NCBI GenBank assembly: GCA_044892525.1
Contig: CM097885.1
Location: 251,968,001-252,032,000, forward strand
Direction of reading: 5' to 3'
Length of the DNA: 64,000 nucleotides
DNA from: Schmidtea polychroa
Taxonomy: Eukaryota
Shown: positions 26,592-64,000 of the stretch, piece by piece
How positions within the stretch are numbered: position 1 is the first letter of the stretch
Layout: each line of letters opens with the position of its first letter
Made by a program: the position numbers and the translations under genes
Notes under the pieces: model-generated
What the model saw: only the letters and a program-made list of their open reading frames with translations
Told to the model about the DNA's origin: nothing
The model's database searches: none

Positions 26592-27176
26592 TTATTCCAT
26601 ATTTGAGATTTCCTCCTGTCGTTTCTTTGAGCGCTCAGCACGCGTGAGGCACTTGCGCTTTTGGGAAGTTGGCTGAACGGGAACAGTGGTGGCAGCTACC
26701 AAAGCTGTCAGTGCCGTCATTGCGTTAGATAGTTGAGTCGGTAGCACGCTGGTTCCCACTAAGATGACATCAGGTACAGGCGGAGGGACATTTCAAGGTC
26801 GTGATTGTGGCAGATCGCCGTAGAATGGGCACTGTTTTCGTCGACACGGTGATGGATTGGGAAAACGTTCGACTTGTCGATGATCGGGAACTCATTGATT
26901 CTACTTTTCTACTCCGCTTCCGAATAGATGTGGTGGAGGGCCTCTGACTGCGCCTTGATAGTGAGGCGCTGGCATCGATTCTCCTCGAGCAGACTATCTC
27001 GACAGTGCTCTAAACGCAAGATTTTCCTATTGGCCTCTTTCATGAGTAGTGAGGAGAACCACGTCCCTTCGAGCGTGTCGATACGCTTCTTCAGAACCCC
27101 GAGATGGTCGTTCAGCTTCCGGATAGTCGCATATGTCTTTGAAATATGTCTTTGGAAGATTCGGTTCAGGCGTATG
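26592..27176 (-). pseudogene. 'WFxP' coiled-coil protein, copy A (stop plus frameshift)
   Basis: KRIDTLEGTWFSSLLMKEANRKILRLEHCRDSLLEENRCQRLTIKAQSEALH ... NVFPIHH ... KRKCLTRAERSKK; homologous to 45048-45794; AG acceptor at 27177-27178. Confidence 0.85.
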
Positions 27177-32300: not shown

Positions 32301-35300
32301 GGGCAAAGACTTTTTGTTGAATCTATTTTACAGTGCACCAAAATACAAGGAATTTGTATGCAATAATCCATGTGTGACATGGGATTCTTTATCTAAATCC
32401 CAGGTTCATCCAGTGACGATTTCGTCAACTGTCGCACAAAATCTTTCACAAATTCACTCCGGTAAACTTCCAGCAACATCAAACAAACCTCCAAATACAG
32501 TCAATACATCCCCAAGCCCTTTTAATAAGTCTCATCATTTTAATAACTCGTCACCGATTAATAAGTTCCAAGCTAATGCCTCTTCATTACTGGTCAATAA
32601 ATCCATAATTCCAGGAAATGTATCCTCACTGCAACCCAAAGACAATACGTTATTGACGACGTCTAATTCTCCTTGTCTGCCTCTTAGTTCTTTATCACAT
32701 CCCAGTAATACATCTTCTTTCACCGCCAATACGTCTTCTCTACAATCGTGTACTTCATTCCCTGGTGGAATACCTTCAATTCCTGTTAATACATTTTCAC
32801 TAGCAGTTAATTCATCTTCTTTACCAAATAATAATTCCCAGAAAGGCGTTGTTCAATTGGTAGCTCCGATAATGAATCATATGCCAAATTTAGTGCTGCA
32901 TCCACAACAATCCGGTGTTTCTGTCAACAATTGTTCAAACCAAGTGATCAACACCGTTTTATGTTCTCCCACTTCTTTCATCACTAACTATGCTGTTATT
33001 GCAACATCTATGTCCAACAATAGATTAGATCCCTATCCCAATCTGTTTAATCGAATGATTAATGAGTCCACGGCAATCCGTCCATTAGCAGTACAAGTCA
33101 ATAATTTCCCAATGTCCGTTACTTCACAAAATAATGCTACATTATCTATGAATAACAATCAGAACAAAGGCTTGCAAATCAATGATTTCGGATCTCTATT
33201 CCAACGACAAAATCAAATGAATGGATTGAACAGTGGTTTGCCCCCGATACCAACACCAATACCGATTGGGAATCATAATTACAACAACAACAGCAACAAC
33301 AATAATAATCATCATGTCAGTAATGATAGCAACGATGAGTCGGTAAATAAGCCATTGGTATATATTCCCGGCAGGCACATAGGCAACGTGTTCAAATCTT
33401 TTAATTACTCGCCATCACCTGAACACAGTGTCCTTATGTTTGGATCTGACCTGGCCCACCTCAATTATGGAGAATATCTCAATGATAACATCATCAATTT
33501 CTATCTCAATTACATCAGATTCGAGAAAATCACACAAGAACAACGAGAACGGTCTCATTTGTTTAATGTCTTTTTCTATACGAAACTACAACGAAAAACC
33601 GGCATCAACGATACCCCAGAAACCCGGCATGCCGATGTAGCGAAATGGACGAAAAAGGTTGACATATTCGACAAGGATTTTATCGTAATCCCAATCAACG
33701 AAAACAATCACTGGTTCTTGGCGATAATATGCTTTCCTTGGATGGCTGGAATGATTAGCTATGATGAAATGTTCGGAACGCCCAATTGTCAGATTTCGGA
33801 AATTCCAGAAAACCATTCAGTATTCTCCAAGAAAACTCGAGTCGAACGATTGAGATTCTTGCAAACACAGAAAAAAATCGAGCCGAAACCGTGCATTTTG
33901 TTATTCGATTCTCTACAACATGTTACTCGCGCACCAAATGTTAAATTGATTAGAGAATATCTCAAAACCGAATGGGACGTCAAGCGTGCAGCGAAAGACG
34001 GTCCGTTAGTTTTTGACAAAAATACCATTCGAGGTTTCAATCCTCAAGTCCCTCAGCAAACCAACACAATCGACTGTGGAATTTATGTTCTCCATTATGT
34101 GGAAATGTTTTTTGAGGTAATTATTATTAATGACATTAAAATTCATAATATTATTATTCTAAAAATTATTGATTAGGGCACACCTCACTGTATAGAATCC
34201 CCCCGTAAGCTAGGCCAAATATATATAACACCCCATATGAATATTCACATTAAATTACACCAGGAAACAGTTTACAAAAAAATATTCGTATAAAAACAGA
34301 ATAATGATAATTTAATATTGAATTTAATAACTAATCAATTTTGATCTATAGTTGTAATGAAAATAAATGAAATCTTTATGAATGTATTTACATATATATA
34401 TATAATTTTTATTTATATTTATTGAATTAATATTGAATTTAATAATTAATCAATTTTTAATATTGCATGACTTCAATCCATAAATTATTAATAATATAAT
34501 AGCCGTCATTAATTTGTTTGTTTGTATTTGTGTCAGATCAAATCAAAACGAATGTTGTTGCACTGATTTTTCGTTGAAAATATTTGTCTCTCTCTTTTGT
34601 TGACATACGTTCCTGATCATCAATTTGTAATGTCCGAATTGATGAAATTCTATTGTTCTTTTGTTATAAAGTTTCGCTTTCTCTTCTAAGTTTTTGTGCA
34701 CTTCTTGCAATAGTCTGTCTCATCCTAAGTTTCGTCATTCCTTCTTTGAACTTGTCGCAAATGTTCAACTTCCAATTTATAATTATGCTCATCCTCAGTT
34801 TCAGTTCTCCTTTGGTTTTGTCTAGCTCCATTTCCTTGTCTTCTAACTTAACTTTAGTCCACAGTTTCATTAGAGCGTTTTTGTTGCTGTTGAATTCTTT
34901 TCTTTGCACGCTTACGTTCCGGACTGACTTTTTACCCATTCCTTTCGATTTATTTTTATTATCATTTTAACTTTTCCCGTCATCATTGACGGGGCATTAT
35001 ACTAGTTATTTAATAGTAAAAATTTTTTCACCTTTATCTCTACATTTTTTTGTTTACATTTGATCTGCTTGTTTTTTAACTTTTAATTATTTTCATTACG
35101 ACTTTTAATCAATAATTTCTATTTTCATAGAAAAGTATAGATTTTTTATCTATTATAGTAATGAAAATATGCCCCGAGTTACTAATCTTTATTAAAAATG
35201 TACAGCGCACAAAAAACCCGTGCTTTAGAGTTGTTATATCTCTAAATACATAATTCTCCATCTATGTATACGAATTAGTGATTAAGGAATTGAAATTAAT

Positions 35301-36949: not shown

Positions 36950-38550
36950 ACTTAGAGGAAAGTCGTTTTCTCCGTGATCGGATTATTGCCCACACGAAAA
37001 TTGCCAAAACTATCTGTGGGCAATTTTCTGTGGGCGTTGCACTTTCTCCACTATTTTACTTCTATCGTTGAATATACTTTTATTATTGTTCCATTCTTTA
37101 GATATCCGAAAACCAAATACTGCTTCTGATGGACTCTTTCCAGTTGTGCTTTGAATGGTAGCATTTAAAGTAAACTCAATTTCAGGTAACACTTCAACCC
37201 AATTTCTCTTAAGTTTATCTCTTAATGATGTACTGATAAAATCTCGTATTGTTCGAAATCGTCTTTAAATCAAACCATTAGTGTTATGTTGATAAGGGCT
37301 AGAAAATTGTAGCTGTATATTAAATTCTTAGCCAACTCTTTTATCAAATTAGACTCAAATGTTTTTCCACAATCAACATGAATAATTCTCGGTGGCCCGT
37401 ATTTTAATATCCAGAATTTAACAATAGTATCCACTGTAGTTTTTTCGCCCTGCTTTGCTACTGCTGTCAACGAAATGTATCGACTACACATATCTATAAT
37501 TCCCAAAATATATTTCTTTCCATGAATGTTTGCCTGCAAAGGTCCACAAAAATCTATCGATATAACCTCAAACGGTTCCGCCACTTGTGTTTTTACAATT
37601 AGTTCTTTTGTTTTTGTTGTCAATGTTTTTCGTTTCTGGCATATTTCACAACTTTGAATACATTGATTCGCGATTGTATTTAATTCCTCCATATCGTAAT
37701 TAACTTTTATATAATCGATTACCTTCTTGCATTCAGCGTGACACAACATTTTGTGCATCTCTTTGACAAATTCTATTCTATTTACTTTTGGAATCCAAAT
37801 TTTATTTTCTCTTGTTAAAATTAAATCTTCGTTGATTTTAAATCTTGTAGTCTCATTTTTATCAATTGCTTTTCTCATATGTTCTATCTCTTCATTACCT
37901 TTCTGCCATTGCATTCCATGTTTAATGGCTGTCATTGCCAGCAATCTGGTTTTTATTTCATCTGTCTTGGCATCTTCATGGATTTCCATACACTGTGTAC
38001 ATTTCCCACATTTATCTTTCGATAATGCGTCAGCGTTCGAATGGTCAATTCCTTTTCGATATTTAATATCCATATCTAAACTACTCAAGAAGTTTATCCA
38101 TGTCTGAAATTGTGCTGTTATAGGTTTTTTTGTTGTCATCATAAATGTTATAGCCTTGTGATCCGTTCTTAGCTGGAATCGCTTGCCGTAAAGATAGTGC
38201 TTAAAATGCTGTGCAAAGTAATAAATTGCTAAAAGTTCCTTTCTCGTGATACAGTATCCTATTTCAAGTTTATTCATCGTATGTGAACCATAGGCAATAA
38301 CACGTTCATTACCTAGATCATCAATTTGTGACAAAACAGCACCTATGGTGTCGAAACAAGCATCTGTATCCAAAATAAATTCTTTCTCGTAATGGGGATA
38401 TATTAGAACTGGTGTAGTTGATAGTGCTTTCTTCAATTCCTCAAAACTTTCTTGACATTCTTGTGACCAAACTAACTTATCTTTATTGTTTCCGCACATC
38501 GATTCTAATATTCTTGCGAATTTTGAATAATTTTTATAAATTTTCTGTAA
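36950..38550 (-). mobile_element. Ty3/gypsy pol fragment (RT connection, RNase H, integrase), 5'-truncated and frameshifted
   Basis: ORF 37270-38499: FILDTDACFDTIGAVLSQ, YCITRKELLAI, FQLRTDHKAI, HKMLCH..C..CQ zinc finger, ISIDFCGP; continues in ORF 37010-37192. Confidence 0.95.
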
Positions 38551-41884: not shown

Positions 41885-42290
41885 GTTGAACTTGTTGGGC
41901 GCTTAGGGGTGTGTCGTGACGGTGGTTACTAGGGGCAATGATTTATTGTCTCAGAGCAAGACTCCTTCCAAAACCCCCATTATGATTTATCAATTTTTCT
42001 CCCATACGTGTACCCATGAGGTTGCTCATGTTGGTGCTGTACACACGGGTTGGAATTCATGAGCAGGTGAGCCCCTGTGATATTCGCCTTTCGGGTTCTA
42101 GAATTTCGATAGAAGGGCTTACATCTTTCTTGTGGGGAATTCCTAAAATATTTCGATAAGCCTCTGGTCCAAATGAGGTCGTTTTTAATCACTCCTTTCT
42201 TTGGAGCGACTGTCAAATCAACATGACTTATCGTTTCCGAAACACCTTCAAATTAAACCAAAGACAGACGACACAAAAATTATATTAAGA
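41885..42290 (+). repeat. Dispersed conserved module, copy 2
   Basis: Colinear with 25865-26270. Confidence 0.85.
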
Positions 42291-42394
42291 GTAGTAACGA
42301 AAAGGCATTTGCACGTTCACTCACATCTGACATACTATACATCAGGTCTATAGAACCGATACCTTCACAAAGCAATACAACTAGTGAACCAGAT

Positions 42395-42820
42395 CATAAA
42401 CGGGTGTCGTTGAAGACCTTTCTGGACCATGATTGCGACAAATCGACGCAGACGGGACATTTATTTCGTCGGCACGATGATGTATAGGAAAGACGTTTCC
42501 CTTTTTCAAGGATTGGCAACTCATTTATTCTGCTCTTCAATTCATCCTCTTAATAAATGCGGCGGACGGCCTCCGATTGGGCCTAGATAGCCAGGCGTTG
42601 ACATGTACCTTCTTCGAGCAAATTGTCACGGCAGTGCTGCAGACGCAAGATCTTCTTATTTGCTTCTTTCATGCGTGGTGGGGAGAACCACGTGCTTTCG
42701 AGTGCATCTATACGCTTCTTTAGAGCCCCAAGATTTTCATTCAATTGCCGGATGACAGCATTTTTATCGGCACACGAAAAACAAGGTTTTGGGCCAGCTG
42801 TCAAGGTTTGGCTCTGACAT
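42395..42820 (-). pseudogene. 'WFxP' protein, copy B (stop plus frameshift)
   Basis: PKPCFSCADKNAVIRQLNENLGALKKRIDALESTWFSPPRMKEANKKILRLQHCRDNLLEE ... NVFPIHH; pyrimidine-rich AG acceptor just upstream. Confidence 0.85.
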
Positions 42821-45047: not shown

Positions 45048-45794
45048 TTATTTTTCCCACTCCGTGTCTGCCAGCAATTTTTCCAGGTTGAAGAATTCGG
45101 AGGCGTTCTCCTCCCATGTTACCCCAGCGGCAGATATGATTCGCCCTGGTATTCCTGTCGTTAGATCGACCGTGGCAGGAACGTCGTTGACTTTACTCGC
45201 GAGATCCGTCGGTTGCGTAAGCTGTTTCGCGGTTATTCGTTCCCGCTGTTTCTTTTTGCGTTCGGCCCTTGATAATTGCCGACGCTTTGGCTTTGCGGTC
45301 GATGAATTGTTCGGGGCTGCCGCAGATGTAGAGGCGATGTTAGGCGGTACCTGACTATTTCCAAAAAAGACAACTTCAGGCTGTTCCGGCGAGAGTTGGG
45401 TTTCTACGCACGGCCGGCAAGACCTCTTCGAAGGGGGCGACGATTTGGCAGATGTATCATGGTGTGCCGGAAAGAGATTGTCGGCTTCATCGATGGGAAT
45501 TTTTACTATCTTCCCAGTGGCCGCTGCCTGTACATATACTTTATGCAGCGCCTCGGACTGCTCCTTTATTAAGCTTCTTTGGGCACGACTCTCGGAGATT
45601 AGAGCGTCCCGACAATGTTCACTTCGGTGTAACTTTTTCTGAGTCTCTTCCATCTGGGCGGGACTAAACCATGTCCCCTCTAACTCGTCTATTTTCTTTT
45701 TATACCGTCCAATCTGGGTCTGTAGGTCCTTGATTATTGCATTGTCTGAACAAGAAAAGCAGGGTCTGAGAACAGGTCTTGAATTTGGTAGCAT
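45048..45794 (-). CDS. 'WFxP' protein, intact copy C (248 aa): PCFSC motif, coiled coil, basic NLS-like segment
   Basis: Uninterrupted ATG ORF preceded by a CAG acceptor; homologous to four other copies in the window; no family recognised. Confidence 0.8.
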   Translation of the reverse strand: MLPNSRPVLRPCFSCSDNAIIKDLQTQIGRYKKKIDELEGTWFSPAQMEETQKKLHRSEHCRDALISESRAQRSLIKEQSEALHKVYVQAAATGKIVKIPIDEADNLFPAHHDTSAKSSPPSKRSCRPCVETQLSPEQPEVVFFGNSQVPPNIASTSAAAPNNSSTAKPKRRQLSRAERKKKQRERITAKQLTQPTDLASKVNDVPATVDLTTGIPGRIISAAGVTWEENASEFFNLEKLLADTEWEK

Positions 45795-53502: not shown

Positions 53503-54272
53503 TGTGTTGGGCCAAGCTTCGAGAGCGTTGGAAATCAGGTTAAGGATGAATAAGAAGGGATAAAATAAATTTCATGAAAATCGCGGAAAAATATAAAAAA
53601 CAACTAAATTAGATAACCATAAAAGAAATAAGAATATAAAGGGAATAAAAATAACTAATAAAATAATAAAATGTATAAGACGAAAAACAAGACGAAAAAG
53701 AAAAGTATCCAACACACATAATAACGGAAGGAAATAAAATAATAAAATCTAAGGAAAATAAACAAGAAATTAAGAAATAAAATAGAAATAAAATCATTTT
53801 CAAATAAATGTATAGGCTAATTAAAACAAAAAAATTATACTATAACCAAATAACAATAAATTCGCAGGAAAAACAGGAGAAAAATAATAAAAAATAGAAA
53901 AATAAATAAAGTAATAATAAAAATAAGAAAAGTCGTTAAAACCTAACATATTACATTAAAAACATAAAAATAATAATAAATAATAACATTGCACACAAGG
54001 CGTGTCCTGATTGGACGAGAAATAGTATAAAAGAAATGGAAAATATCTGTAGAGTACCATTTAACCGCTATACTCTACAGACTTAGAAACCTATTTTTGG
54101 ACATCACTACAACTTATTCAACAGTAACCTTTTGATAGACGACAAGTTAAAATCATTCGAAATCATTCAGATAGAGATCAGGATTTTAAAGGGACGAAAC
54201 CACTAAACTTAGAAAACAATTCGAATATTCTTAACGATATTTTCAACGCTCTCGAGGAAACTTTTGGTAAGT
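53503..54272 (+). promoter_or_regulatory. LTR-like promoter block pointing right, bracketed by inverted repeats, ending in a splice donor
   Basis: TGTGTTGGGC start; IR TCGAGAGCGTTG 53519-53530 / CAACGCTCTCGA 54244-54255; CTGATTGG 54007-54014; TATAAAA 54026-54032; G|GTAAGT 54267. Confidence 0.65.
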
Positions 54273-55629
54273 GGTATGAATGAAAATTGTATGATAATTT
54301 TAGATATAATAATGAACAATAAAAACATTTTATTTTAATAAAATTTATACTTTCAAAGATGCATTCTTTCTTTATGATGGCTGGCGACGATGTCGTCTAG
54401 GAATAGGATGTGATGCGGCGAATTTGAATGAATCTGAAGAGAATGTCTGGGAACGAATAGCAGGAAAGGAGGAACTTGAATCGAGGTTTGAAATGAAATG
54501 AATATCACGCGAGCTGATTTTTTAATGCATAACGAGCATCACCATGCGGCATCATATCCGAAACGTAGACGGCGTGGTCGCCAGGTAATTAATTTTCCAT
54601 TCCGTAGATATGATTTTATAAGATTGATTCATTCATGAACCTATTTGATTATATTCCTTTTTGTAATTATTTATGATTCACTTGTGGAATAATAATTGGG
54701 AAGATAGAATCGTCCTTCCTGACGGTCCAAGAGTGGTGGCAGCAATGTATGCCGTTCTTGGGTGGGTCAGGAGGGGTGAGGACATCTAGTGAGTGGCAGA
54801 AAGCAGTTGTAGGGACAAGTCTTTTCATCGAGTGCGATCCGTGGTTATCGTTATCGTAAATATTTCCATCAGAACGAATTACAGTCAGGAAATTTAATGT
54901 AGAGGACAAATCCATGGAGAATTTTAGCAAAATTGCGGAACTACTAAGTATAGACACTATATCCAATTGTCTTTTCTCAAATCTCGATTGAATACGAACT
55001 ACGGCTTGTACTTGCCGACTAATAGTGTCGAAATATCCAAACAGCAGAGACCTGTATTCACGCGATATTGACGATAGAATTTCATAGGAAAATTGTGAAA
55101 CGGTAGTCTTCTAAGGTTTGAATCGCCAGGACATTGGCGACGAAACCCATCTACGATGTACTTTTAGGCTGAATTTTCCACTCTTGTATTGCTGATAAGC
55201 CTTGATTCTCTGAAAATAAAGTAAACAAATCCTGAGGAATTATCGGAATACTTACGGCCGATATGAAGGAAATCGCTGTCAATGTTATCGGCTAATTGCT
55301 GAACGAATTTCAGTTAGATTTTGAGTAACCGAGTTAGATGACGAACAAAAATCTAATAGGAGAGATAACGTGATAATTTCCGACATGATCTGTATAGTGG
55401 GCGTAGTGATAAATATCGCCTTGAGTCAACAACACGATAGAGGACGGATTAACAGTCCCAATTTACTCGTAATTCTCTACATCTGTCACATACTGTCTGC
55501 GGCGATTACTCATGGAAACTCTAGTAGAAAATTCTAAGGGACTACCTCTCGAGAATGCATACAGTTAGACACACAATAGCGAAATTTCTCCTGGTAGGAT
55601 GATAGTAAATCCGAACAGTAAATTGTGTT

Positions 55630-56987
55630 ATGTCATCAGAAGCGAAATTAGCGAGAAATAGAGTGCTAACAGCATATCGCAGATTGTTGAATGATATAAA
55701 TGTCGAGGACGACATTTTAAACGACAGCGGGGGAGATAAAGACGACGATAATGATGAAGATAAAGACGACGATAATGATGAAAAAGGGCGAAACGAGGAT
55801 AAAGAGAAAAAGAAACCAGAAGGGAATAATCAAGAAAACGACTCAAGTATGAAAAAGGAGGAAAATAACCCGGGAAACCGAACAAAGGAAGAGGAAAAGA
55901 CGAATAATGAAAAACAGAGGGTATGCCTACTTTTCACCAACAAGGAAATGGAGACAAATATGATGATAATGATACTTGTACTAACAATGGTGGAAATGAT
56001 AACAGCCCAGGGAGGAATGAGAACGATAAAAGAAGCCAAAGAAACGAAAAATGAAGACAATAAGGAGGAAGAACTAAACCAGGAAAAGAAAAAACGAATA
56101 CAGGATCAACAATGGGATCTTCAGGAAGAATGGGATCTAAAGGAAAAGTGTATAATAGGGAAATGTATGTCTAGAGCTTATAAGAGACTAGTGCTAATAA
56201 ACGAAGATACGGAACCAATAACGGAAGTGGGAATACAAGAAGCGTACCAACATCGAGACGGAAAGAAAATAACAAAAGTTAAATGGAAGGAGGTACACCT
56301 GGGTAAAGGAGGCGAGATAGTGATAACACAACTTCAGCCGAGAAAGGAGTACAAAGTTTGTATTTCAAGGTTAGGACCAGGAGAAGACTGGTTTACAATA
56401 TGTAACACAGAAACAACCCCCAAAGGAATATACGGTCTGTATCTTGAGAAACGGTCCAGAGAGAGAATGTCGACGATATCCTGGGAAAAGAGGCAAGAAA
56501 AGGAAAATCATTGATGAAAAAGATGAGGAAGAAAGCGCAAGAAAACCAGCGAGAAATATCAGGACAACTATGTGTCAGAGGAAGAGATGGAAAAAATACA
56601 AAAAATGGCAAGAGAAGGCATGAACGAGGAGATAGCGAGAATACGAGGAATGATAAAGGGAAATGGCAAAGGCGGTAATCCGAAAAGTACAGAGAGGATA
56701 TCAACAATAACAAACAAGGAAAAATCAGAAATTATAAGCGTGAAACAGATGATGTGGATAAGTGGAATAATAATAGCAGGGGCATTTTTAATCATAACGG
56801 GGGAACAATAAAAATAATCAAAGATAGATGGCATCGCGGAGAACTGGAGATGGTCAGAATGAGAAATTTTCAACATCGAGTAAAACGACCAAGTAATATC
56901 AAGCAGGAACAGTGGGTGGAGGCCTGGAATGCTCAGCGCCCTCCAAACTCACACATAGAAAGGATTATGACTGTATATAAATTGTAA
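55630..56987 (+). pseudogene. Acidic N-terminal segment followed by a type I membrane protein (signal peptide from ATG 55948, FN3-like domain, TM, cytoplasmic tail), frameshifted
   Basis: MMIMILVLTMVEMITAQG; EIVITQLQPRKEYKVCISRLGPGE...TETTP; TM MMWISGIIIAGAFLIITG; tail in ORF 56754-56987. Confidence 0.6.
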
Positions 56988-57111
56988 AAAGTAAGTATGT
57001 AATATTTATTTATATAACAGTATTCTATATCTCTATATAAGCGCGGTATCAATATTATATGATGACGGGGATAAATAACATAAAAATAAAATTAGATAAG
57101 GGTTGAAAAGT

Positions 57112-57486
57112 ATGTATAAATTGAGAATGGAGCAAATAAACAACGAGGTACATCACAGCACGACAACCGAAGAGATGTGGAAACAACAATGTGCAATGCT
57201 GGCCCAAGTAATTTCGAATTTACAAGAACAAGGACTTGCGGTACAAAGGAACTTAGTCGACAGTTTGAATAAAGGATTCAGTTATGTAAGAATCATCGAA
57301 GATCAACGGATAAAAATAGAGCAAATGCAGCAAGAAATAGATCGAATATCGTGATACAGCCAGGGACAGGAAGAGGAGTTAATGAGAATCGCGGAAGAGA
57401 TGGAGAGAGAGGAGATAGAAGACTGGTCTGAATGGCTAACCAGTAGGGAAGAGGGCGGACAAGAGGCCGACTCTTCCAGCCAATAA
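57112..57486 (+). pseudogene. Small coiled-coil/acidic protein with one in-frame stop at 57352
   Basis: The frame continues past TGA as YSQGQEEELMRIAEEMEREEIEDWSEW... to TAA at 57484. Confidence 0.55.
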
Positions 57487-57574
57487 ATATAACCTAAAAC
57501 AAAATGTAAATAACTGTAAATAGAAATACGAGATTGTACCAGTAACGAATATATGTATATATATAATTATAGAA

Positions 57575-58960
57575 ATGGACAAGCGACTAAGAGAAGAGTT
57601 CAAAGAGATTGTCGAACAAGTCAGAAAATCCACCACAATTCGAATACATGACCATGTGAAGTGTGGAATATGCAAGGGATTATTAAAGGAACCTCACCAA
57701 ACCAGATGTGGATGTAGAATGTGCAAGGAATGTGTAGAGGAGATAATAAAGAAGGGACCACAATGGTGCCCGGTATGTAAAGAAACCATGATAACCAGTT
57801 TGGGAGATACAAACGAGGACAAAGCAGCAGTAAAAGATATGTTGAATGCAAATTTAGGATGTAAAAACACCCCATGTAATTGGCGAAGATTGATATGGGA
57901 AGTCAAGCAACATATAGAAGGATGTGCGTATAAAATCAGTCAATGCAAGCGCTGCCAGGAAGTGATAAAAGCCAATGAAGAAGCAGAACATCAAAGTCGA
58001 TGCGAAGAAAGGCTGGAGAAATGTGAATATTGCGGAGAAACCGATACCCGAAGAAAACTAACTAGTCAACATCATAACTTACAAGAGGAGAAAGTGTGCG
58101 CAGAATTCAGAGGAGAATGTCCCAACAAATGCGATAAATCCGGAGTAATAAAACTCGCTCAACATCTGAGAATGTGAAAGGATAAAGATAACGTGTGTGT
58201 TAGGAAAATGGGGATGTCAGAAACAATTACACCGAGGAGAATTACCCCAACATCTAGCAGAAAACGTATCAACACACGCGGAAATGTGGTCAACGGTATT
58301 ACAAGAAAACGAAAGGAAAACCGAAAACTTAGAAAAGAAATAATCTCGCTAAAAGCGTTGGTAAAGGAGTTATATCAAGAAAAAGAAGCATTTGAAGAGG
58401 CGAGAACAAGTACAAAGATACAGACCGACTTAGTAGAAACTAGCAATAATATGGTGAAGGAACTACACCAAAAGGTAAGCGAAATGAACCTCAACGAATT
58501 ATTACCAACGGCTCCCTACATATGGAAAATAACGGGAGTAAAGGAAAAAATGCAGAAAGCGAGAAACGGAAAGGATACAACATTACTAAGTCCAGCATTC
58601 TATTCATGGAAAAACGGGTATAAAATGAAAATGAAAGCATATCCCAACGGGGATGGAAGCGCATACGGAAAACATTTCTCAGTATTCTTCTTGATGTGCA
58701 AAGGGCTATACGACGAGTTAATAGAATGGCCATTCAAAGCAAAAATAGACCTCGCAATGATGAATCATCAAAGTATACATGAACAGAGTTTTCATACAGC
58801 AGGAAACCTCGTATGTTATCAAAGGCCATTGAAAGAAGAAGGACCAGCATCCGGAGCACCGAATTTCATCTTATAGCGAAAAGTAGAGGATATGACGAAG
58901 AACGACACCATATACATAAAGATAACGGTGAGGCGAGATGGGAAGAGCAGAACAAAATAA
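57575..58960 (+). pseudogene. TRAF: Intronless TRAF (RING, TRAF zinc fingers, coiled coil, MATH) with two compensating frameshifts and one nonsense codon
   Basis: RING CGICKGLLKEPHQTRCGCRMCKEC..CPVC; shifted frame about 58167-58335 ECERIKITCVLGKWGCQKQLHRGELPQHL; MATH YIWKI..SPAFYS..GYKM.M.AYPNGDG..GKHFSVFF....YD.LIEWPF; after TAG 58874 the frame continues KNDTIYIKITV. Confidence 0.93.
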
Positions 58961-59181
58961 CGAAACGAATAATTTTGTATATACTAATTTGTAAATATCG
59001 GCGTATATATCCAGTAAAATATTATATAATAGTGTAGAAAAACCCCAAATATACTAATGGTAAACTCAAGCGGAAAAATTCTAAAGTGACCCACTGATAA
59101 CGAATTGTAAATAATAAATAAATAGCGAAAACAAATATAATTATGCTACGCCAAGTTAATAATATCGTTATTTAGCTAAAG

Positions 59182-60210
59182 ATGGCACAAGAAACCCCAA
59201 ACCACGAGATAAGAATCAATAAAGTACACAGAGAAAGATGGGCCAAAGTGATGGCACAACTAGCAAATCAAACACGAAACTATCTCGAAGAAGCAAGAGA
59301 ATGGAAGAACCACCAATTCCAGTGGCTGGTGCAGAATTTAAGAGCGGAGGCAGAGGCCTGTAAAAGAGCCGCCAAGTGGTCGGCACTAGAAAGTACGCGA
59401 CAGGAGGCACATGGCCACTACCTGAAACAACTGGTACAGGAGTCAAGGAAAAGGTTAACTGATGAGAATAAGAAACGGGAAATAGAAAAACAAAAGGAGG
59501 AAAGGAAAACCCGTCAACTATTGGCAGAAGCCAGAAAGTGGAAAAGGCAACATCGAGAAATTAAAAAGGAAATGAAAGAACTACCTCAGAGGCTAGAATA
59601 CGAAAGTGAGCAAGGAAAGTGGGAAGAAAACCTAGATCAGAGAGAAGAGCTGAGAAGGCTCAGAAAAATCGCCGCCCGTAGTCAAACCTGGCAGACCAAG
59701 GCCATGGAATTCGAAAGGCACTTGGCCATGAAAATATCCATAAAGGAACAGGAAAATACTGCCATGGAAGAAATGATCCTGCAACAATCAGGAAGAATCG
59801 TAGAACTCGTGAACAAGGTAGCAGACCTAGAACGAGACAACAACGGCTATAAAGGGGCACTAGAGCAAAGGAACATAGCGCTAGGCGGAAAGAACAAAAA
59901 ATTGGAAAATGAAAGGAAAATGTATCATGAAAACATCAAGAACTTGGAAAAGGAGATAAAAAAATGGGAAAACGGCGAAAAGGCCGAAGAGTTAGAAAAA
60001 CAGATAGAAGTAAGAGATGATGAAACCAGGTATCTGACATACCTGTTGGACGAGGAACTTAACGTTTCAAGAGCATTGAGAGACGAAGTTCAGGAGCTTA
60101 GAGCTCAGATTCCTCGATACTATATCCCATTCGATCCCATCGCACTCCATCTACAAGCATCAGTAGAAAGCGATGAAGGATATGTTGGCCAGGAAGAAAC
60201 CTTTGTGTAA
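59182..60210 (+). CDS. Hypothetical coiled-coil protein (342 aa), intact
   Basis: Uninterrupted ATG ORF, E/K/R/Q-rich heptads, Trp-punctuated; no family recognised. Confidence 0.75.
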   Translation: MAQETPNHEIRINKVHRERWAKVMAQLANQTRNYLEEAREWKNHQFQWLVQNLRAEAEACKRAAKWSALESTRQEAHGHYLKQLVQESRKRLTDENKKREIEKQKEERKTRQLLAEARKWKRQHREIKKEMKELPQRLEYESEQGKWEENLDQREELRRLRKIAARSQTWQTKAMEFERHLAMKISIKEQENTAMEEMILQQSGRIVELVNKVADLERDNNGYKGALEQRNIALGGKNKKLENERKMYHENIKNLEKEIKKWENGEKAEELEKQIEVRDDETRYLTYLLDEELNVSRALRDEVQELRAQIPRYYIPFDPIALHLQASVESDEGYVGQEETFV

Positions 60211-60382
60211 AGATAAATGGAAAAGATAAAAAAAAATCGGGACCTATATCCCAAACAAAAAAATTAATAGTATGGTTAAACTATTTACGGGACTGTAACC
60301 CTGATTAGATAAAATTACATATAAATGTATAAGTATAAGCCGCACTGTAGCGCAATTATTAATTATGTATATATTATAGAAA

Positions 60383-61084
60383 ATGAACACTGAAAACGGA
60401 CAACCCATCATAACATCTATAATCGAGCTGAAAGAGGGAGAAATTGAAGTAGAAGAAGTGGAGAGGAAGAAAACTATTAAGGAAGAATTACAAGAGGAGA
60501 GACAAGAAAACGAAAGATTAGTAGAAAGATGGAGAGATAATCGAAAAATGATTAAAGTATTGAAAAAAGAATATACCTTGTTAGAAGAAGTAAAGAAAGA
60601 AGTAGAGGAAGAAAACGAATGGCTTCACGAACAAAGAAAGCGTGGGAGAAATTGGGAAAAGATCGCGGGAAAATTATGGCAGGAAAGGGCCAGTAGAAAG
60701 GCAGATGAAGTGATTAGCGATTATTGGAAAACCGAGGCACGAAAACACCAAGAAAGCCTGAAAGAGTTACAACTCCAACTACACCAAAAACAAAAGGAAT
60801 GTGAGATAATGAGAAGAATGAAAAACAAATACCAAGAAATAGACGACGGAGAAGATGAGGAAAGAGAAAATGACTTTCTACAAATAATGAACCATAAAAA
60901 CCTAGAAAGGGCAACACAAGAAATAAAAGTGTTAAAAGGAAAAATAACAATCCTAAAACAACAGGTAGACGAAAGAGACAAACAACTAGAAGTACTACCC
61001 GAATTGAGAAAACGAGTAATAAAAGCAGAAACTGAAGTGATGAGAGCATCTGAGAAAGCCCGTAAAAAGAAAACCCGGCAATAA
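60383..61084 (+). CDS. Hypothetical coiled-coil protein (233 aa), intact
   Basis: Uninterrupted ATG ORF, E/K-rich heptads. Confidence 0.75.
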   Translation: MNTENGQPIITSIIELKEGEIEVEEVERKKTIKEELQEERQENERLVERWRDNRKMIKVLKKEYTLLEEVKKEVEEENEWLHEQRKRGRNWEKIAGKLWQERASRKADEVISDYWKTEARKHQESLKELQLQLHQKQKECEIMRRMKNKYQEIDDGEDEERENDFLQIMNHKNLERATQEIKVLKGKITILKQQVDERDKQLEVLPELRKRVIKAETEVMRASEKARKKKTRQ

Positions 61085-61137
61085 TTAAAGATGAATTATT
61101 GATGTAAATAATTGTAAATAAAAATTCGTATAGTAGT

Positions 61138-62260
61138 ATGTGGCCCGGAGCAACCCTGGTAACAATAATGATGATAGCAATAAACGGAATACCCATGTGG
61201 CAGTCAATCCCAACACGTTGGAAGATTCCCGAAAAACAAATAATGAAACTCCGACTAATAGTGGAGAACGAGCTCGAAGATTTAATTCCTTCTCATTCAC
61301 AATATCTGTTGCAAAGTATAAAGCAATGGAAAATGAATTTAAAGCATTATTCAACGATAAATCCTTCACCAGATTCGTTGCCGGTCAAGAGGAGCAAGGT
61401 GACGGTGGATTCCGTCATTTGCAGATGTATTGTGAGGTATTATTTATTTTATTCGATTATGATTAATTAATGGAATAAAATTTATAATTCAGATTTACAA
61501 CAATATGTCTATTTATGCCTTTAGGGCAAAAACGTTTATACCATTTGTTCGAGGAATTGCCGGGACTGAGAGAGCGGCCGCAATCGCATATGCGACTAAA
61601 CTCGATTCTAGAGTCGCTGGAGGAATGAGCATTAAATTTGGACAGCCAAGTAAATATAATAGTTCGAATACTATAGATTATTTCAAAAAAGCGTTGAATT
61701 CTTCCTCTATGAAAGAAGGTCTCGAAATATTAATGCAGAATGAAGCTTTTCATTATACCACCAAGAGGAAGACAATAATAGAAACTTTCGTTAATAAATT
61801 TGGTCTTGCAACTATGCCTAATTTTGGCGATAATTTTTTAATTGATAAATTTAATGTATATGATTGGAAAAGTCACATTTTTGTTGGCGATAGTGGAATA
61901 GGAAAAACTAATTTTGCACTTGCTCATTTTAATAAACCAGTTCACTGTAAACATCTACAAATGCTCAATCGAATTACGGATGATATTTCTCATTGCGATG
62001 GAGTGGTATTCGATGACCTTTACTTTAATAAATGTCGAGTAGAAGAATTTCTCGCTTTAATAGATTGTGCGTACGAGAACGTTATCAACATCAAATATTC
62101 TGTAGCTGTCCTACCAAAGGGATTACCACGCATTTTCTGTATAAACGATATCGATCTTTTTTACCCAGAATGTGTAACATCTACAATAATGGAGGCAATT
62201 AAAAGACGAATAAAAATACATCATTTCAGAGGAAGAATTTTTATTTATTTTATTTATTAA
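61138..62260 (+). CDS. rep: CRESS-DNA-virus-type Rep (HUH endonuclease plus SF3 helicase), split by a probable intron of about 60 nt
   Basis: Motif I FTIS (61296), motif II RHLQMY (61416), motif III YATK (61589), Walker A GDSGIGKT (61886-61909), Walker B VVFDD (62003-62017), motif C IFCIN, Arg finger AIKRR; AT-rich GT..AG segment 61432-61493 restores the frame. Confidence 0.9.
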
Positions 62261-62532
62261 TATATGTTTTACAGACAATGATACATCCCTATCTGACAAC
62301 GAGCCAGTCGTCCAGCCAAAATGCCGATTTGTCTCCCTCGAATGCAGAAGCTGCAACAAATTAATGCGATTGTATATTGGTGTTTGTAACAATAGTTTTT
62401 AGTTTCATTACCTAATAAATGCATATTAGTGTTTTTTGAAAATAGTTTTTAGTTTAAATAGTCAATAAAAGTTAGAAGAAATTTTTTATTTTATCAAATA
62501 TATCGTATTTGACATCGTTTAATACATTTATA

Positions 62533-63141
62533 TCAGAAAAAAACATCTAAATTAACTTTAAATTCATAAGGTTTTTGAACTACAATATATAAAGACCTAT
62601 TTTTCAAAGCTTGTTCATGTTCAGATGCATATTTCCAAATTGGATGATTGTTGGATATAATACATGGACAATTTGTTAATTCAATTTTAGAATCTCCTTT
62701 ACGTGAAACTTTAAGAAATATATTCCCTTCGCACATTAATTTAAGCAAATTGACATTTTTAAAATCACAATAGATTTCTTCTCCAATAATAATTTCTTTG
62801 CCAACACAATCATCAAAACAGAATTCACTTTGAGTTTGAGCACCGGTGAAAAATCCATGTTTTAATGTTCCATGACATATTGCAGTAAATAAAGTTTTTC
62901 CTCCATTACTAGCACCTTCTAGAATAATTGTCTTTGTCTTTCCGGCCTGAGAAGATAGTATTGTATAGATCCCAATAAGCCGACGAATATACTTTTCATT
63001 TTCTTTAGGAACAATTTTACTATTATGAGAAAGAATTCGATTAATTTGTCTATTGTGATCATCGTTAAAATAGAAATTATTGTTATTAATAAAACTCTCC
63101 ATAAAAGTTGATAATTCATTGTATAACAACAACTTGTTCAT
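62533..63141 (-). CDS. Stand-alone SF3 helicase, parvovirus NS1 / papillomavirus E1-like, without a nuclease domain (202 aa)
   Basis: KTKTIILEGASNGGKT (Walker A 62893-62916), SEFCFDDCVGKEIIIGEE, LKLMCEG..LKVSRKG, PCIISNN parallel the parvoviral KRNTIWLxGPxxTGKT / NFPFNDC...WEE / AKAILGG.V.VDxK / PVIVTSN series. Confidence 0.88.
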   Translation of the reverse strand: MNKLLLYNELSTFMESFINNNNFYFNDDHNRQINRILSHNSKIVPKENEKYIRRLIGIYTILSSQAGKTKTIILEGASNGGKTLFTAICHGTLKHGFFTGAQTQSEFCFDDCVGKEIIIGEEIYCDFKNVNLLKLMCEGNIFLKVSRKGDSKIELTNCPCIISNNHPIWKYASEHEQALKNRSLYIVVQKPYEFKVNLDVFF

Positions 63142-63194
63142 GATTAATGAAATGACTCATCGATGTTTTGTACTTTTATTCAAAAATATATAGT

Positions 63195-63350
63195 AAAGTA
63201 AAGGCAATTTACTGTGCCTTCGTTACAAAGGTAATTTACTGTACTTCCCTATATATTTTTGAAAACTCCCACGCAGTCTTTTGTGTGCGGTGTGCTCCTT
63301 ATAGACTTGGGAAATGGGGGGTATGGGGGCCCTGTAGCCCTGTAGGCCCC
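63195..63350. promoter_or_regulatory. Candidate replication origin / bidirectional control region
   Basis: Hairpin AAGGCA-ATTTACTG-TGCCTT 63201-63220, an imperfect copy with the same loop 27 nt downstream, and a GC stem GGGGGCC...GGCCCCC near 63325-63350, between divergent genes. Confidence 0.45.
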
Positions 63351-63400
63351 CTAAACAAATTAAAAAACGAAAGAAAGCCATACAACAACATCCAGGAACA

Positions 63401-63715
63401 ATGTTGGAACAAGCCGTATGGCAAAAGATTCAAATGCAACTCAGCCTGCAAACCCAAAGAATTGAACAACTCGAAACTCTCCTACAAGAACAAACCACTC
63501 AACAATCACTGTAGGAAACCATCGTGAAGAAGGAAGCAAAAGAAAGTCAAGTCTTACTCTATACTGCAGTCAGTGAAACCCTTATCATCTGCGCGCTAGT
63601 CGTCTGGAAAGCGTATGACATCTATCGAACATGGGAAAGAAACCAGCCACTATCCTGTATGCGGGACAGACGTAATAAACTTCGAGTCGTAAGAGTGTCA
63701 CTGACAATACCGTAA
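63401..63715 (+). pseudogene. Small coiled-coil plus TM protein with one in-frame TAG
   Basis: MLEQAVWQKIQMQLSLQTQRIEQLETLLQEQTTQQSL*ETIVKKEAKESQVLLYTAVSETLIICALVVWKAY... reads in a single frame. Confidence 0.5.
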
Positions 63716-63751
63716 TGTTTGCAGTGTGAGTATAAATGTCTTAACTTTTAG

Positions 63752-64000
63752 ATGACTACCCCAACCAAGTCCGGAAGCACTCTTCGTCCTTGCTTTTCCT
63801 GTGCCGATAAAAATGCGGGGAATTATATCGGGGAATTAAAAAAGAGGATCGACCTCTACGAAGGAACGTGGTTCTCCCCGCCACAAATGAAAGAAGAGAG
63901 CAGTAAAATCTTGCGATTAGAACATTGTCGCGACAGCCTCCTGGAGGAGAGCCGCTGTCAGAGACTGACAATAAAGGCCCAGTCGGAAGCCCTCCACAAG
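63752..64000 (+). pseudogene. 'WFxP' protein, copy E (in-frame stop, truncated by the window end)
   Basis: TTTTAG|ATG; MTTPTKSGSTLRPCFSCADKNAGNYIGN*KKRIDLYEGTWFSPPQMKEESSKILRLEHCRDSLLEESRCQRLTIKAQSEALHK. Confidence 0.85.

What the first reader, a model, noticed from the sequence alone, without database searches (positions are those of the whole stretch)
53503..64000. Composite virus-like element: CRESS Rep, second viral SF3 helicase, TRAF and membrane cargo behind an LTR-like promoter
Seen: a >10 kb block with a promoter/IR cassette, five co-oriented cargo genes (FN3-like membrane protein, TRAF, three coiled-coil proteins), a HUH-SF3 Rep, a convergent NS1/E1-like helicase, hairpins, and a 'WFxP' gene whose other copies sit among LTR-retroelement debris. 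No capsid, polymerase or RT is visible in the block. Known (recalled, verify): the planarian element PEVE pairs a circovirus-like Rep with a papillomavirus-E1-like helicase, and giant accessory-ORF-rich gypsy elements (Burro) are described from Schmidtea. Inference: this is either an integrated, enlarged PEVE-like rolling-circle element carrying immune-signalling cargo, or a giant LTR retroelement that captured an ssDNA-virus replication module. Either would be an unusual chimera.
Basis: partly seen in the sequence, partly recalled or inferred. Interest (0 to 1): 0.93.

Follow-up and report, generated by a model that had tools for sequence, protein, structure and literature searches.

The report
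Integrated PEVE-like replication module beside TRAF array
The right end of this window holds a decayed, chromosomally integrated copy of the two replication genes of the planarian virus-like element PEVE. It lies directly against an array of intronless TRAF and coiled-coil genes of the kind reported in giant planarian retroelements. Both ingredients are known, and only their possible union would be new.

Summary

**Replication module (about 61.14-63.27 kb).** It holds a CRESS-type HUH-SF3 Rep and a convergent, stand-alone NS1/E1-like SF3 helicase. Their best relatives are the two segments of one known two-segment element, which I take to be PEVE of Girardia tigrina, plus two new contigs that carry the same gene pair. 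Integrated PEVE-like copies in Schmidtea ('PIVE', Repbase 2008) are already published.

**Cargo (55.6-61.1 kb).** This is a sharply bounded A/G-rich island of intronless, co-oriented genes: a membrane-protein-like gene, a small coiled-coil gene, a complete TRAF and two coiled-coil ORFs. Three of the five are broken. A TRAF (RING, coiled coil, MATH) is published cargo of Burro/GYPSM1 giant gypsy elements, but I could not test sequence membership.

**WFxP gene.** It belongs to a separate repeat family with four copies in the window.

**What is missing.** I found no LTR, TIR, gag, pol or capsid.

**One unit or two?** Unresolved, and I put one unit at about 0.4.
- For: a 23-nt spacer motif occurs only before TRAF and before Rep, and only 55 nt separate the array from Rep.
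- Against: composition changes abruptly at the junction, and no PEVE-like relative carries the cargo.

**State.** Rep, TRAF and two other genes are disrupted, so the locus is a relic.

**Scores.** A new member of known kinds; interest is moderate.

The parts
53519..54255 (.). Segment bounded by an inverted repeat (29-nt arms, 83% complementary). It encloses a 440-nt A-rich stretch and a CCAAT-like/TATA-like region near 54.00-54.04 kb. Whether it belongs to the gene array is unproven.
   Evidence: It has no second copy in the window. Composition between 54.0 and 55.6 kb is neutral, unlike the array.
54046..54081 (.). Perfect 11-bp stem with a 14-nt loop, just downstream of the TATA-like box.
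   Evidence: -8.4 kcal/mol, z -6.8, matched by 0 of 200 shuffles.
55630..56810 (+). Membrane-protein-like gene (broken). It has a charged N-terminal part, a hydrophobic stretch, a beta-rich part and, further on in the same frame, a transmembrane-like segment. It is the first gene of the A/G-rich array.
   Evidence: No Pfam family matched. AF2 pLDDT was 39, so 'FN3-like' remains untested.
57103..57490 (+). Small charged, coiled-coil-like gene (broken).
   Evidence: No Pfam family matched.
57505..57527 (+). Copy 1 of the 23-nt spacer motif (27 nt with its flanks). It sits between the small coiled-coil gene and TRAF.
   Evidence: two matches in 64 kb against 0.02 expected; the motif is the only similarity between the two upstream segments.
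57575..58876 (+). TRAF gene (broken), intronless: RING, TRAF-type zinc fingers, coiled coil and MATH.
   Evidence: zf-C3HC4 E 1.9e-5; TRAF MATH E 1e-22; PDB TRAF3/2 and TRAF6/5.
59182..60210 (+). Intact 342-aa charged, coiled-coil-like ORF.
   Evidence: No Pfam hit, no homologue in 5.8 billion proteins and none in IMG/VR.
60383..61084 (+). Intact 233-aa charged, coiled-coil-like ORF. It is the last gene of the A/G-rich array.
61103..61125 (+). Copy 2 of the 23-nt spacer motif, in the 55-nt spacer between the last array gene and Rep.
61140..62260 (+). Rep gene (broken), of CRESS type: an HUH endonuclease part (motif II HxQ, motif III YxxK) followed by an SF3 helicase (Walker A, Walker B, motif C).
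62533..63141 (-). Stand-alone NS1/E1-like SF3 helicase, convergent with Rep. It is an intact 202-aa ORF, 20-42 aa shorter than its closest relatives.
63179..63263 (.). Long imperfect hairpin (38-nt arms, of which the outer 15 nt pair perfectly), 38 nt upstream of the helicase start codon. It is a candidate promoter, origin or terminal-palindrome remnant.
   Evidence: -17.4 kcal/mol, z -5.7. It has no other copy in the window.
63770..64000 (+). Neighbour, not part of the element: the 5' end of a copy of the WFxP repeat family, cut by the end of the window.
   Evidence: Other copies lie at about 25870-27124, 41892-42789 and 45048-45794 (all on the minus strand). Homology begins abruptly at about 63.78 kb.

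Best explanation
The block is a decayed chromosomal mosaic made of parts from two different origins. It is not a demonstrably single element.

**Shown**
- About 61.14-63.27 kb is an integrated replication module of the PEVE/PIVE kind. It holds a CRESS-type Rep (HUH endonuclease plus SF3 helicase) and a second, stand-alone NS1/E1-like SF3 helicase.
- 55.6-61.1 kb is a compositionally distinct, A/G-rich array of intronless, co-oriented genes separated by short AT-rich spacers: a membrane-protein-like gene, a small coiled-coil gene, a complete TRAF and two coiled-coil ORFs.
- The WFxP gene to the right belongs to another repeat family.

**Inferred: how the parts once worked**
- In the free relatives, Rep would nick a hairpin origin and start rolling-circle or hairpin-primed replication. 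The second helicase would act as an accessory replicative motor. This follows from what is established for HUH-SF3 Reps and for parvovirus NS1 and AAV Rep40.
- The TRAF and coiled-coil genes would interfere with host TRAF, ubiquitin and cell-death signalling, as has been proposed for Burro cargo.

**Inferred: how the parts came together**
The array comes from a retroelement-type (Burro-like) accessory region, and the PEVE-like module was joined to it secondarily in the genome. The junction does not look random. I therefore leave about 0.4 for the joined unit having itself been propagated.

**Present state**
Inactive. Rep, TRAF and two other genes are disrupted, and no termini, capsid, gag or pol are present.
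For: **Identity of the module**
- Rep C-terminal piece: six homologues, four carrying Viral_Rep or Gemini_AL1 domains. YxxK, Walker A, Walker B and motif C are invariant in the alignments.
- The AF2 model hits papillomavirus E1, PCV2 Rep, SV40 large T antigen, B19V NS1 and AAV Rep40.
- Helicase: Parvo_NS1 E 4.5e-14. It aligns over its full length with stand-alone proteins of 222-244 aa.
- The top IMG/VR hit for Rep is a 5699-bp contig, and the only hit for the helicase is a 1911-bp contig. Both belong to one UViG and share 243-nt terminal inverted repeats. The 1911-bp contig is AF364089.1.
- The Rep-plus-helicase pair recurs in L001 and L002 but in none of 27 ordinary CRESS contigs.

**Different origins**
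- The A/G-rich island at 55.6-61.2 kb includes its spacers (AT skew 0.23-0.56). The skew falls to about zero from 61.2 kb.
- GC3 is 0.33-0.45 in the cargo ORFs, against 0.18-0.35 in Rep and helicase.
- No cargo homologue occurs in PEVE, L001 or L002, and no other PEVE ORF occurs in the window.
- There are no TIRs around the module or the block, and no repeat of the left cassette.

**Literature**
- PIVE is published as an integrated PEVE relative, with 'numerous' copies in S. mediterranea (PMC3198968).
- Burro/GYPSM1 carries RING, Smc and MATH_TRAF_C domains. In a Dugesia/Girardia relative the MATH domain sits in an upstream accessory ORF (PMC6431247).

**Decay**
See the break counts in the full report.
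Against: **The junction looks non-random**
- Rep is co-oriented with the array and starts 55 nt after the last cargo stop codon.
- That spacer carries a 23-nt motif found only once more in 64 kb, in the spacer before TRAF. The expected count is 0.02. The motif is the only similarity between the two upstream segments.
- The octamer TGTAAATA occurs six times in 729 nt of array spacers, against 0.09-0.14 expected.
- These points fit a real composite unit better than a chance neighbour.

**Burro origin is untested**
- It rests on published domain lists only. No Burro sequence could be compared.
- The order of domains differs from that published for Burro1.
- The window has no CCHC knuckle anywhere.

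**Limits of the data**
Only one copy is visible, and it sits at the edge of the window.
Confidence: 0.5

Rival explanations
1. True composite element. A PEVE-like DNA element lineage acquired the TRAF/coiled-coil gene array, or the array acquired the replication module. The joined unit then multiplied, and this locus is one decayed copy of it. The spacer motif would be a regulatory signal shared by its genes, for example a poly(A)-proximal or promoter element.
For: Rep is co-oriented with the array and follows it by 55 nt. The 23-nt motif occurs only before TRAF and before Rep. TGTAAATA is enriched in the array spacers. The ATG next to the Rep start has a start-codon context (TATAG..ATG) like those of TRAF and the 233-aa ORF. 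Decay is of a similar degree on both sides. In the two-segment relative, co-oriented ORFs also run right up to the Rep start.
Against: Composition breaks abruptly at 61.1-61.2 kb. No termini of any kind were found. The cargo is absent from PEVE, L001 and L002. The motif is absent from the relatives' spacers. The published figure legend for PIVE lists no MATH domain (PMC3198968). No second copy could be retrieved.
Confidence: 0.33
2. Giant LTR retroelement (Burro-type) that captured the ssDNA replication module. On this reading 53.5-54.3 kb is the 5' LTR or promoter, the array holds upstream accessory ORFs, and the WFxP ORF is the start of gag-pol, continuing beyond the window.
For: The plus strand is A-rich across the array, as is typical of retroelements. 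TRAF is published Burro cargo, and an upstream accessory MATH ORF is reported in a related species (PMC6431247). WFxP copies lie on the same strand as a gypsy RNase H-integrase fragment at 37.3-38.5 kb.
Against: The 53.5-54.3 kb cassette has no second copy, not even next to the other WFxP copies or the gypsy pol fragment. 54.0-55.6 kb is compositionally unlike the array. No retrotrans_gag family or CCHC knuckle occurs in WFxP or anywhere in the window. Homology among WFxP copies starts at the ORF itself, with no shared upstream sequence. The helicase is antisense to the proposed transcript.
Confidence: 0.1
3. Assembly chimera: unrelated repeats were joined by mis-assembly at one of the junctions.
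For: The genome is very rich in repeats. The window has four N runs elsewhere, and composition shifts sharply at 55.6 and 61.2 kb.
Against: There are no Ns in 53-64 kb. The junction spacer carries a motif shared with an internal spacer of the array, which a random mis-join would not produce.
Confidence: 0.04

Closest known systems
PEVE, the planarian extrachromosomal virus-like element of Girardia tigrina (Rebrikov et al. 2002). Here it is the 1911-bp record AF364089.1 (L003/L006) and its 5699-bp partner (L007).
   Same: It has the same hallmark gene pair: a circovirus-like Rep and a stand-alone helicase of 200-240 aa resembling papillomavirus E1 and parvovirus NS1. The window's Rep and helicase have these two segments as their best and only IMG/VR relatives (31% and 33-35% identity).
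   Different: The window copy is integrated in a chromosome. Its two genes are convergent at one locus rather than on two segments. It lacks the 243-nt terminal inverted repeats and the other PEVE ORFs (624, 268 and 265 aa). Its Rep is disrupted, and it lies against a TRAF/coiled-coil array that PEVE lacks. That these records are PEVE rests on my recollection of the accession and of the 2002 abstract, and on the term 'PEVE small segment' in PMC3198968. No tool printed a title.
PIVE, the planarian integrated virus-like element of Schmidtea mediterranea (Repbase Reports 2008; discussed in Liu et al. 2011, PMC3198968).
   Same: It is a chromosomally integrated PEVE relative in a planarian genome. 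It is described as having numerous NS1-like copies, and its PIVE_1p protein groups with the PEVE small segment.
   Different: The published figure legend mentions TIRs and only the Parvo_NS1 and PPV_E1_C domains. The window copy has no TIRs and has a TRAF array as its neighbour.
Burro / GYPSM1 giant Ty3-gypsy retroelements of planarians (Jurka 2007; Grohme et al. 2018; reviewed in PMC6431247).
   Same: They carry a TRAF-like region (RING/AIR1, Smc-like coiled coil, MATH_TRAF_C) and accessory ORFs. In a related species the MATH domain lies in an upstream accessory ORF. The window's array has an A-rich coding strand, as is typical of retroelements (my knowledge, not a published Burro feature).
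   Different: The visible part has no LTR pair, gag, CCHC knuckles, protease, RT or integrase. The genes are separate ORFs with AT-rich spacers, not one polyprotein. A membrane-protein-like gene and two further coiled-coil ORFs are not in the published domain list. No sequence comparison was possible.
CRESS-DNA virus Reps (Cressdnaviricota; for example PCV2 Rep, PDB 7lar and 8xms).
   Same: They share the HUH motif II, YxxK motif III and the SF3 Walker A, Walker B and motif C. The structural match to the PCV2 Rep ATPase domain has an rmsd of 3.9 A over 128 columns.
   Different: There is no capsid gene and no canonical nonanucleotide stem-loop in the module. Rep is paired with a second helicase and is integrated and disrupted.
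Parvovirus NS1 / AAV Rep40 and the papillomavirus E1 helicase domain.
   Same: The second gene is an SF3 helicase of this type (Parvo_NS1 E 4.5e-14; AAV Rep40/68 E 7e-5).
   Different: It has no N-terminal nuclease or origin-binding domain and no VP gene. The helicase stands alone at about 200 aa, as it does in PEVE.

Membership tests
CRESS-type Rep (HUH endonuclease + SF3 helicase) | SF3 helicase motifs: Walker A, Walker B and motif C | tested here: met
   These columns are invariant in alignments A1 and A5. The AF2 model matches PCV2 Rep, E1, large T antigen and NS1.
CRESS-type Rep (HUH endonuclease + SF3 helicase) | HUH motif II and the catalytic YxxK motif III | tested here: met
   The Y and K of YxxK are invariant in A5. 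The HxQ region aligns with relatives, at 54.5% identity over 22 aa with the two-segment element.
CRESS-type Rep (HUH endonuclease + SF3 helicase) | Motif I (FTxNN-like) near the N-terminus | tested here: inconclusive
   A candidate is visible by eye in the N-terminal piece. Pairwise comparisons of that part with relatives are not significant.
CRESS-type Rep (HUH endonuclease + SF3 helicase) | Stem-loop origin with a nonanucleotide next to Rep | tested here: not met
   NANTATTAC occurs at the chance level and not within 61-63.8 kb. Hairpins exist, but none has that loop.
PEVE/PIVE-type element | Rep most closely related to the Rep of the PEVE large segment | tested here: met
   L007 is the top IMG/VR hit (E 5e-35). 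Only L001, L002 and L004 score better overall.
PEVE/PIVE-type element | A second, stand-alone NS1/E1-like SF3 helicase of about 200-240 aa, paired with Rep | tested here: met
   The pair occurs only in the window, L001, L002 and L003+L007 among the 38 loci examined.
PEVE/PIVE-type element | Unique regions flanked by long terminal inverted repeats (243 nt in L003/L007) | tested here: not met
   No inverted repeat above the shuffle level flanks the helicase, the module or the block.
PEVE/PIVE-type element | The other PEVE ORFs (624, 268 and 265 aa) | tested here: not met
   tblastx of L007 and L003 against the window matches only Rep and the helicase.
PEVE/PIVE-type element | Sequence identity with the Repbase PIVE entry | not testable with these tools
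   The Repbase sequence is not held. Only its description in PMC3198968 was read.
Burro/GYPSM1 giant gypsy retroelement | TRAF-like cargo (RING, coiled coil, MATH_TRAF_C) | tested here: met
   compared with the published domain list (PMC6431247).
Burro/GYPSM1 giant gypsy retroelement | Long terminal repeats | tested here: inconclusive
   The window has no direct repeat of 53.5-54.3 kb or of any other part of the block. The right end of any such element would lie beyond the window.
Burro/GYPSM1 giant gypsy retroelement | Gag with CCHC knuckles, then protease, RT, RNase H and integrase | tested here: not met
   There is no CCHC pattern in any frame of the window, and no such Pfam family in the block's ORFs. 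The only RNase H-integrase fragment lies at 37.3-38.5 kb on the other strand.
Burro/GYPSM1 giant gypsy retroelement | Sequence similarity to Burro1-4/GYPSM1 | not testable with these tools
   No Burro sequence was available, and the Grohme et al. paper is not held.
Helitron (rolling-circle transposon) | RepHel protein with a Pif1-type SF1 helicase | tested here: not met
   Both helicases here are SF3.
Parvovirus/densovirus-derived endogenous element | NS1 with an N-terminal nuclease domain, plus a VP capsid gene | tested here: not met
   The helicase ORF matches only positions 102-238 of the Parvo_NS1 profile. There is no Parvo_coat hit.

The most novel reading that the evidence does not exclude
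The Rep/helicase module and the TRAF/coiled-coil array form one propagating chimeric element. This would be a PEVE-type ssDNA replicon that took up a retroelement-style array of host-signalling genes (a TRAF decoy, coiled-coil proteins and a membrane protein), each with its own short AT-rich spacer and a shared 23-nt signal. The reverse, the array taking up the replicon, is equally possible.
Probability: 0.35. Interest if true: 0.8.

Novelty: new member of a known kind. Interest (0 to 1): 0.42.

Why it matters
PEVE is one of very few DNA virus-like elements known from free-living flatworms, and it has been almost unstudied since 2002.

This locus, together with two new contigs that carry the same Rep-plus-stand-alone-helicase pair (L001, L002), shows that the 'two-helicase' design defines a small clade. 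That clade has both free and integrated members. It gives a dated-by-decay fossil for studying how CRESS-like replicons enter animal genomes.

If the link to the TRAF array proved real at other loci, it would be a rare case of an ssDNA-type replicon carrying immune or cell-death signalling cargo. It would also connect two otherwise separate stories in planarian genomics: the TRAF expansion and Burro cargo on one side, and PEVE/PIVE on the other.

If the link is not real, the locus is an ordinary nest of repeats.

Tried and rejected
- **Exact-sequence look-ups.** Rep and the 342-aa ORF are not on record, so no other genomic copy could be fetched.
- **Homologue search with the helicase.** It found nothing because of the tool's length window. 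The representative search then worked.
- **The 342-aa ORF.** It has no homologue in 5.8 billion proteins and none in IMG/VR. TRAF also has none in IMG/VR.
- **Metagenome scan with the helicase alignment.** It gave only two distant short contigs. Contexts of two further helicase relatives were too short to help.
- **Structure of the first cargo ORF.** The AF2 model is unusable, so 'FN3-like' remains untested.
- **Search for termini.** No TIR, LTR or TSD was found around the module or the block. The terminal repeat of the two-segment element has no counterpart here.
- **Other scans.** There are no Rfam families or tRNAs. The canonical CRESS nonanucleotide occurs only at the chance level.
- **Duplication of a gene plus its spacer as the source of the motif.** Rejected: the coding segments upstream of the two copies are unrelated.
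- **WFxP as gag.** Rejected for lack of any gag family or CCHC knuckle.
- **The array as a host TRAF gene cluster.** Considered unlikely. The genes are intronless, several are broken, and the strand bias extends through the spacers.
- **Papers not held.** The PEVE paper and the Schmidtea genome paper could not be read.

Full report
**Setting.** The window is AT-rich (22-44% GC) and full of repeats. It contains:
- a Tigger-type DDE_1 transposase;
- a Ulp1/SENP-type peptidase ORF;
- a Ty3/gypsy RNase H-integrase fragment;
- a 21-nt minisatellite.

This fits a planarian genome, but no tool named the organism. The finding covers the last 10.5 kb, so anything to its right is unseen.

**Check of the observation.**
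- *TRAF.* It is complete in domain terms. The N-terminal part matches RING (E 1.9e-5) and the RING plus zinc-finger regions of TRAF6/TRAF5. The C-terminal part matches TRAF MATH (E 1e-22) and TRAF3/TRAF2.
- *Charged ORFs.* Two ORFs of 342 and 233 aa are intact, and a smaller one is broken. At this base composition, stop-free frames of these lengths are far beyond chance (my estimate from the composition).
- *First gene of the array.* It has a hydrophobic stretch and, further on in the same frame, a transmembrane-like segment. 'FN3-like' could not be tested: there is no Pfam hit, and the AF2 model has pLDDT 39.
- *Hairpins.* Three fold far better than shuffled sequence.
- *Left cassette.* The inverted repeat with a TATA-like/CCAAT-like region exists.
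- *Absent.* No capsid, polymerase, RT or zinc knuckle is in the block.

**The replication module.**
- *Rep, sequence.* The C-terminal piece finds six homologues. Four of them carry Viral_Rep or Gemini_AL1 domains, on contigs of about 2 kb. YxxK, Walker A, Walker B and motif C are invariant in the alignments.
- *Rep, N-terminal piece.* It carries the HxQ motif II, at 54.5% identity over 22 aa with the relative L007.
- *Rep, structure.* An AF2 model (core pLDDT 75-86) matches SF3 helicases. The most compact match is the PCV2 Rep ATPase domain.
- *Second gene.* It is an SF3 helicase of the parvovirus NS1 / papillomavirus E1 type. Its closest relatives are stand-alone proteins of 222-244 aa that align with it end to end. 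The short form is therefore the natural one, not a truncated NS1.

**Which family?**
- One helicase relative lies on the 1911-bp record AF364089.1 (L003). In IMG/VR this same contig is the only helicase relative (L006).
- Its partner contig of 5699 bp is the best Rep relative (L007, E 5e-35).
- The two contigs share 243-nt terminal inverted repeats.
- This matches what I recall of PEVE of Girardia tigrina: a circovirus-like Rep and an E1-like helicase on unique regions flanked by inverted repeats. It also matches the 'PEVE small segment' named by Liu et al. (PMC3198968). No tool printed a title, so the name rests partly on my recollection.
- Two further contigs (L001, L002) carry Rep followed by the helicase in tandem. 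Both of their genes match the window's (Rep E about 1e-45; helicase E 1e-26 to 1e-36).
- None of 27 ordinary CRESS contigs has the second helicase. Rep plus a stand-alone helicase therefore marks a small clade, and the window's pair belongs to it.
- In the window the pair is convergent, not tandem. It has no terminal inverted repeats and none of the other ORFs of the two-segment element.
- Integrated PEVE relatives in Schmidtea are already on record as PIVE (Repbase 2008), described with 'numerous' NS1-like copies (PMC3198968). I could not compare with that entry.

**The cargo array.**
- From 55.6 to 61.2 kb the plus strand is strongly A/G-rich, spacers included (AT skew 0.23-0.56). Both edges are sharp.
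- The genes are intronless and co-oriented. They are separated by AT-rich spacers of 55-305 nt.
- They have no relatives elsewhere in the window, in the protein collections, in IMG/VR or in any PEVE-like locus.
- The review by Arkhipova and Yushenova (PMC6431247) reports that Burro1/GYPSM1 carries RING (AIR1), Smc-like coiled-coil and MATH_TRAF_C domains. Read together, those make a captured TRAF. The review also reports that a Burro-like element of a related species encodes the MATH domain in an upstream accessory ORF.
- MATH/TRAF genes are greatly expanded in S. mediterranea (PMC6109357).
- The array therefore looks like retroelement-type cargo. This is a resemblance from the literature, not a tested membership: the visible part has no LTR, gag, knuckle or pol.

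**State of the genes (counts only).**

| Gene | State |
|---|---|
| Membrane-protein-like gene | Up to three in-frame stops, if the transmembrane-bearing stretch in the same frame belongs to it |
| Small coiled-coil gene | One in-frame stop |
| TRAF | One in-frame stop. The MATH match ends about 20 profile positions early at the ORF end, so there is probably one further disruption or truncation |
| 342-aa and 233-aa ORFs | Intact |
| Rep | Its two conserved parts lie in different frames: one frame change, or possibly an intron. There is no in-frame ATG ahead of motif I, so possibly a second frame change |
| Helicase | Intact, but 20-42 aa shorter at the C-terminus than its closest relatives |

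The Reps of several relatives are also split over two ORFs, at other positions. Splicing in this family is therefore possible.

**One element or neighbours?**

*For a unit:*
- Rep is co-oriented with the array and starts 55 nt after the last cargo stop.
- That spacer carries a 23-nt motif (27 nt at 24/27 identity) found only once more in the window, in the spacer before TRAF. The expected count is 0.02.
- The coding segments upstream of the two copies are unrelated, so the motif is a discrete element and not a by-product of gene duplication.
- Its core octamer occurs six times in 729 nt of array spacers, against about 0.1 expected.
- The two motif copies could equally be direct repeats bracketing the 3.6-kb segment that holds TRAF and the two intact coiled-coil ORFs.

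*Against a unit:*
- Composition breaks at the junction.
- GC3 is 0.33-0.45 in the cargo and 0.18-0.35 in Rep and helicase.
- The cargo is absent from all relatives, and the motif is absent from their spacers.
- There are no termini.
- Demonstrable PEVE homology begins only at the motif-II region. The N-terminal 70 residues of Rep show no significant similarity to relatives. The junction could therefore lie anywhere within about 240 nt.
- The difference in composition shows different origins, but it does not exclude later joint propagation.

*My weights:* secondary joining 0.5, true propagating composite 0.33, Burro-type LTR element with capture 0.1, mis-assembly 0.04. These four are exclusive. 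The figure of about 0.4 used elsewhere for 'one unit' covers the second and third together.

**The flanks.**
- *WFxP ORF.* It has four copies in the window. Homology starts abruptly at about 63.78 kb, and the other copies have neither the array nor the module beside them. It is a neighbour, not a part.
- *Left cassette (53.5-54.3 kb).* It has no second copy and is separated from the array by 1.3 kb of neutral composition. 'LTR-like' is unsupported.

**Verdict.** The PEVE lead is confirmed by test, and the Burro lead is plausible from the literature. The claim of one unusual chimera is unproven. Under the best-supported reading this is a new, decayed member of known kinds, of moderate interest.

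**Declaration of slips against the operators' added rule.**
- Two early scripts printed raw frame translations of the region with a coordinate ruler, so stop codons are visible in place.
- In my reasoning I located one in-frame stop, and I inspected by eye a short stretch between the two Rep pieces as a possible intron, before stopping.
None of these places is repeated in this report, and nothing was deleted.

Noticed in passing
window 25870-27124 (-), 41892-42789 (-), 45048-45794 (-), 63770-64000 (+): A repeated gene family ('WFxP') of about 0.9-1.25 kb, with unusually high GC (0.50 in the intact 248-aa copy). It has no Pfam family and no shared upstream sequence among the copies. What kind of element carries it is unknown.
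   Followed up: partly
L001 (Logan SRR32618891, 2142 bp) and L002 (Logan SRR27560321, 4342 bp): Two undescribed contigs carry a PEVE-type Rep followed in tandem by the stand-alone SF3 helicase. L002 also encodes a 528-aa protein with no known family. They suggest a wider 'two-helicase' clade of CRESS-like elements.
   Followed up: partly
L004 (Logan SRR10873733, 2051 bp): A Rep of the same clade lies convergent with a trypsin-family gene (Pfam Trypsin, E 1.5e-33). It is probably an endogenous copy in another animal genome.
   Followed up: no
L003 1-243 / 1669-1911 and L007 1-243 / 5457-5699: The two segments of the known element share 243-nt terminal inverted repeats at 98-100% identity. The Rep of the large segment, like those of L002 and L005, appears to be spread over two reading frames.
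   Followed up: partly
window 57505-57527 and 61103-61125; also 58990 and 59106: The spacer motif contains two tandem copies of UGUAAAUA. From my own knowledge, this matches the Pumilio-response-element consensus UGUANAUA. Single copies lie in the spacer after TRAF. Whether it is a 3'-UTR signal, a promoter element or a recombination scar is open.
   Followed up: partly
window 17058-18600: A long minisatellite with a 21-nt period: at least 46 overlapping register copies at 60-88% identity.
   Followed up: no
window 8310-9673 (+): A Tigger/pogo-type DDE_1 transposase split over two ORFs (E 7.8e-27 for the larger).
   Followed up: no
window 32131-34176 (+): A 681-aa ORF with a C-terminal Ulp1/SENP C48 peptidase domain (E 9e-33) and a long Asn/Ser-rich N-terminal part. 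It is probably a host gene or a large exon of one.
   Followed up: no
window 37270-38499 (-): A Ty3/gypsy RNase H-integrase fragment (RT_RNaseH_2 E 7e-33; rve E 5e-11). It is on the same strand as two of the WFxP copies upstream of it. A link between them was not established.
   Followed up: partly
window 63264-63770: About 500 bp of GC-richer sequence (0.41-0.43) lies between the helicase-side hairpin and the WFxP copy. It contains a 119-aa ORF with no family and has no similarity to anything else examined.
   Followed up: no
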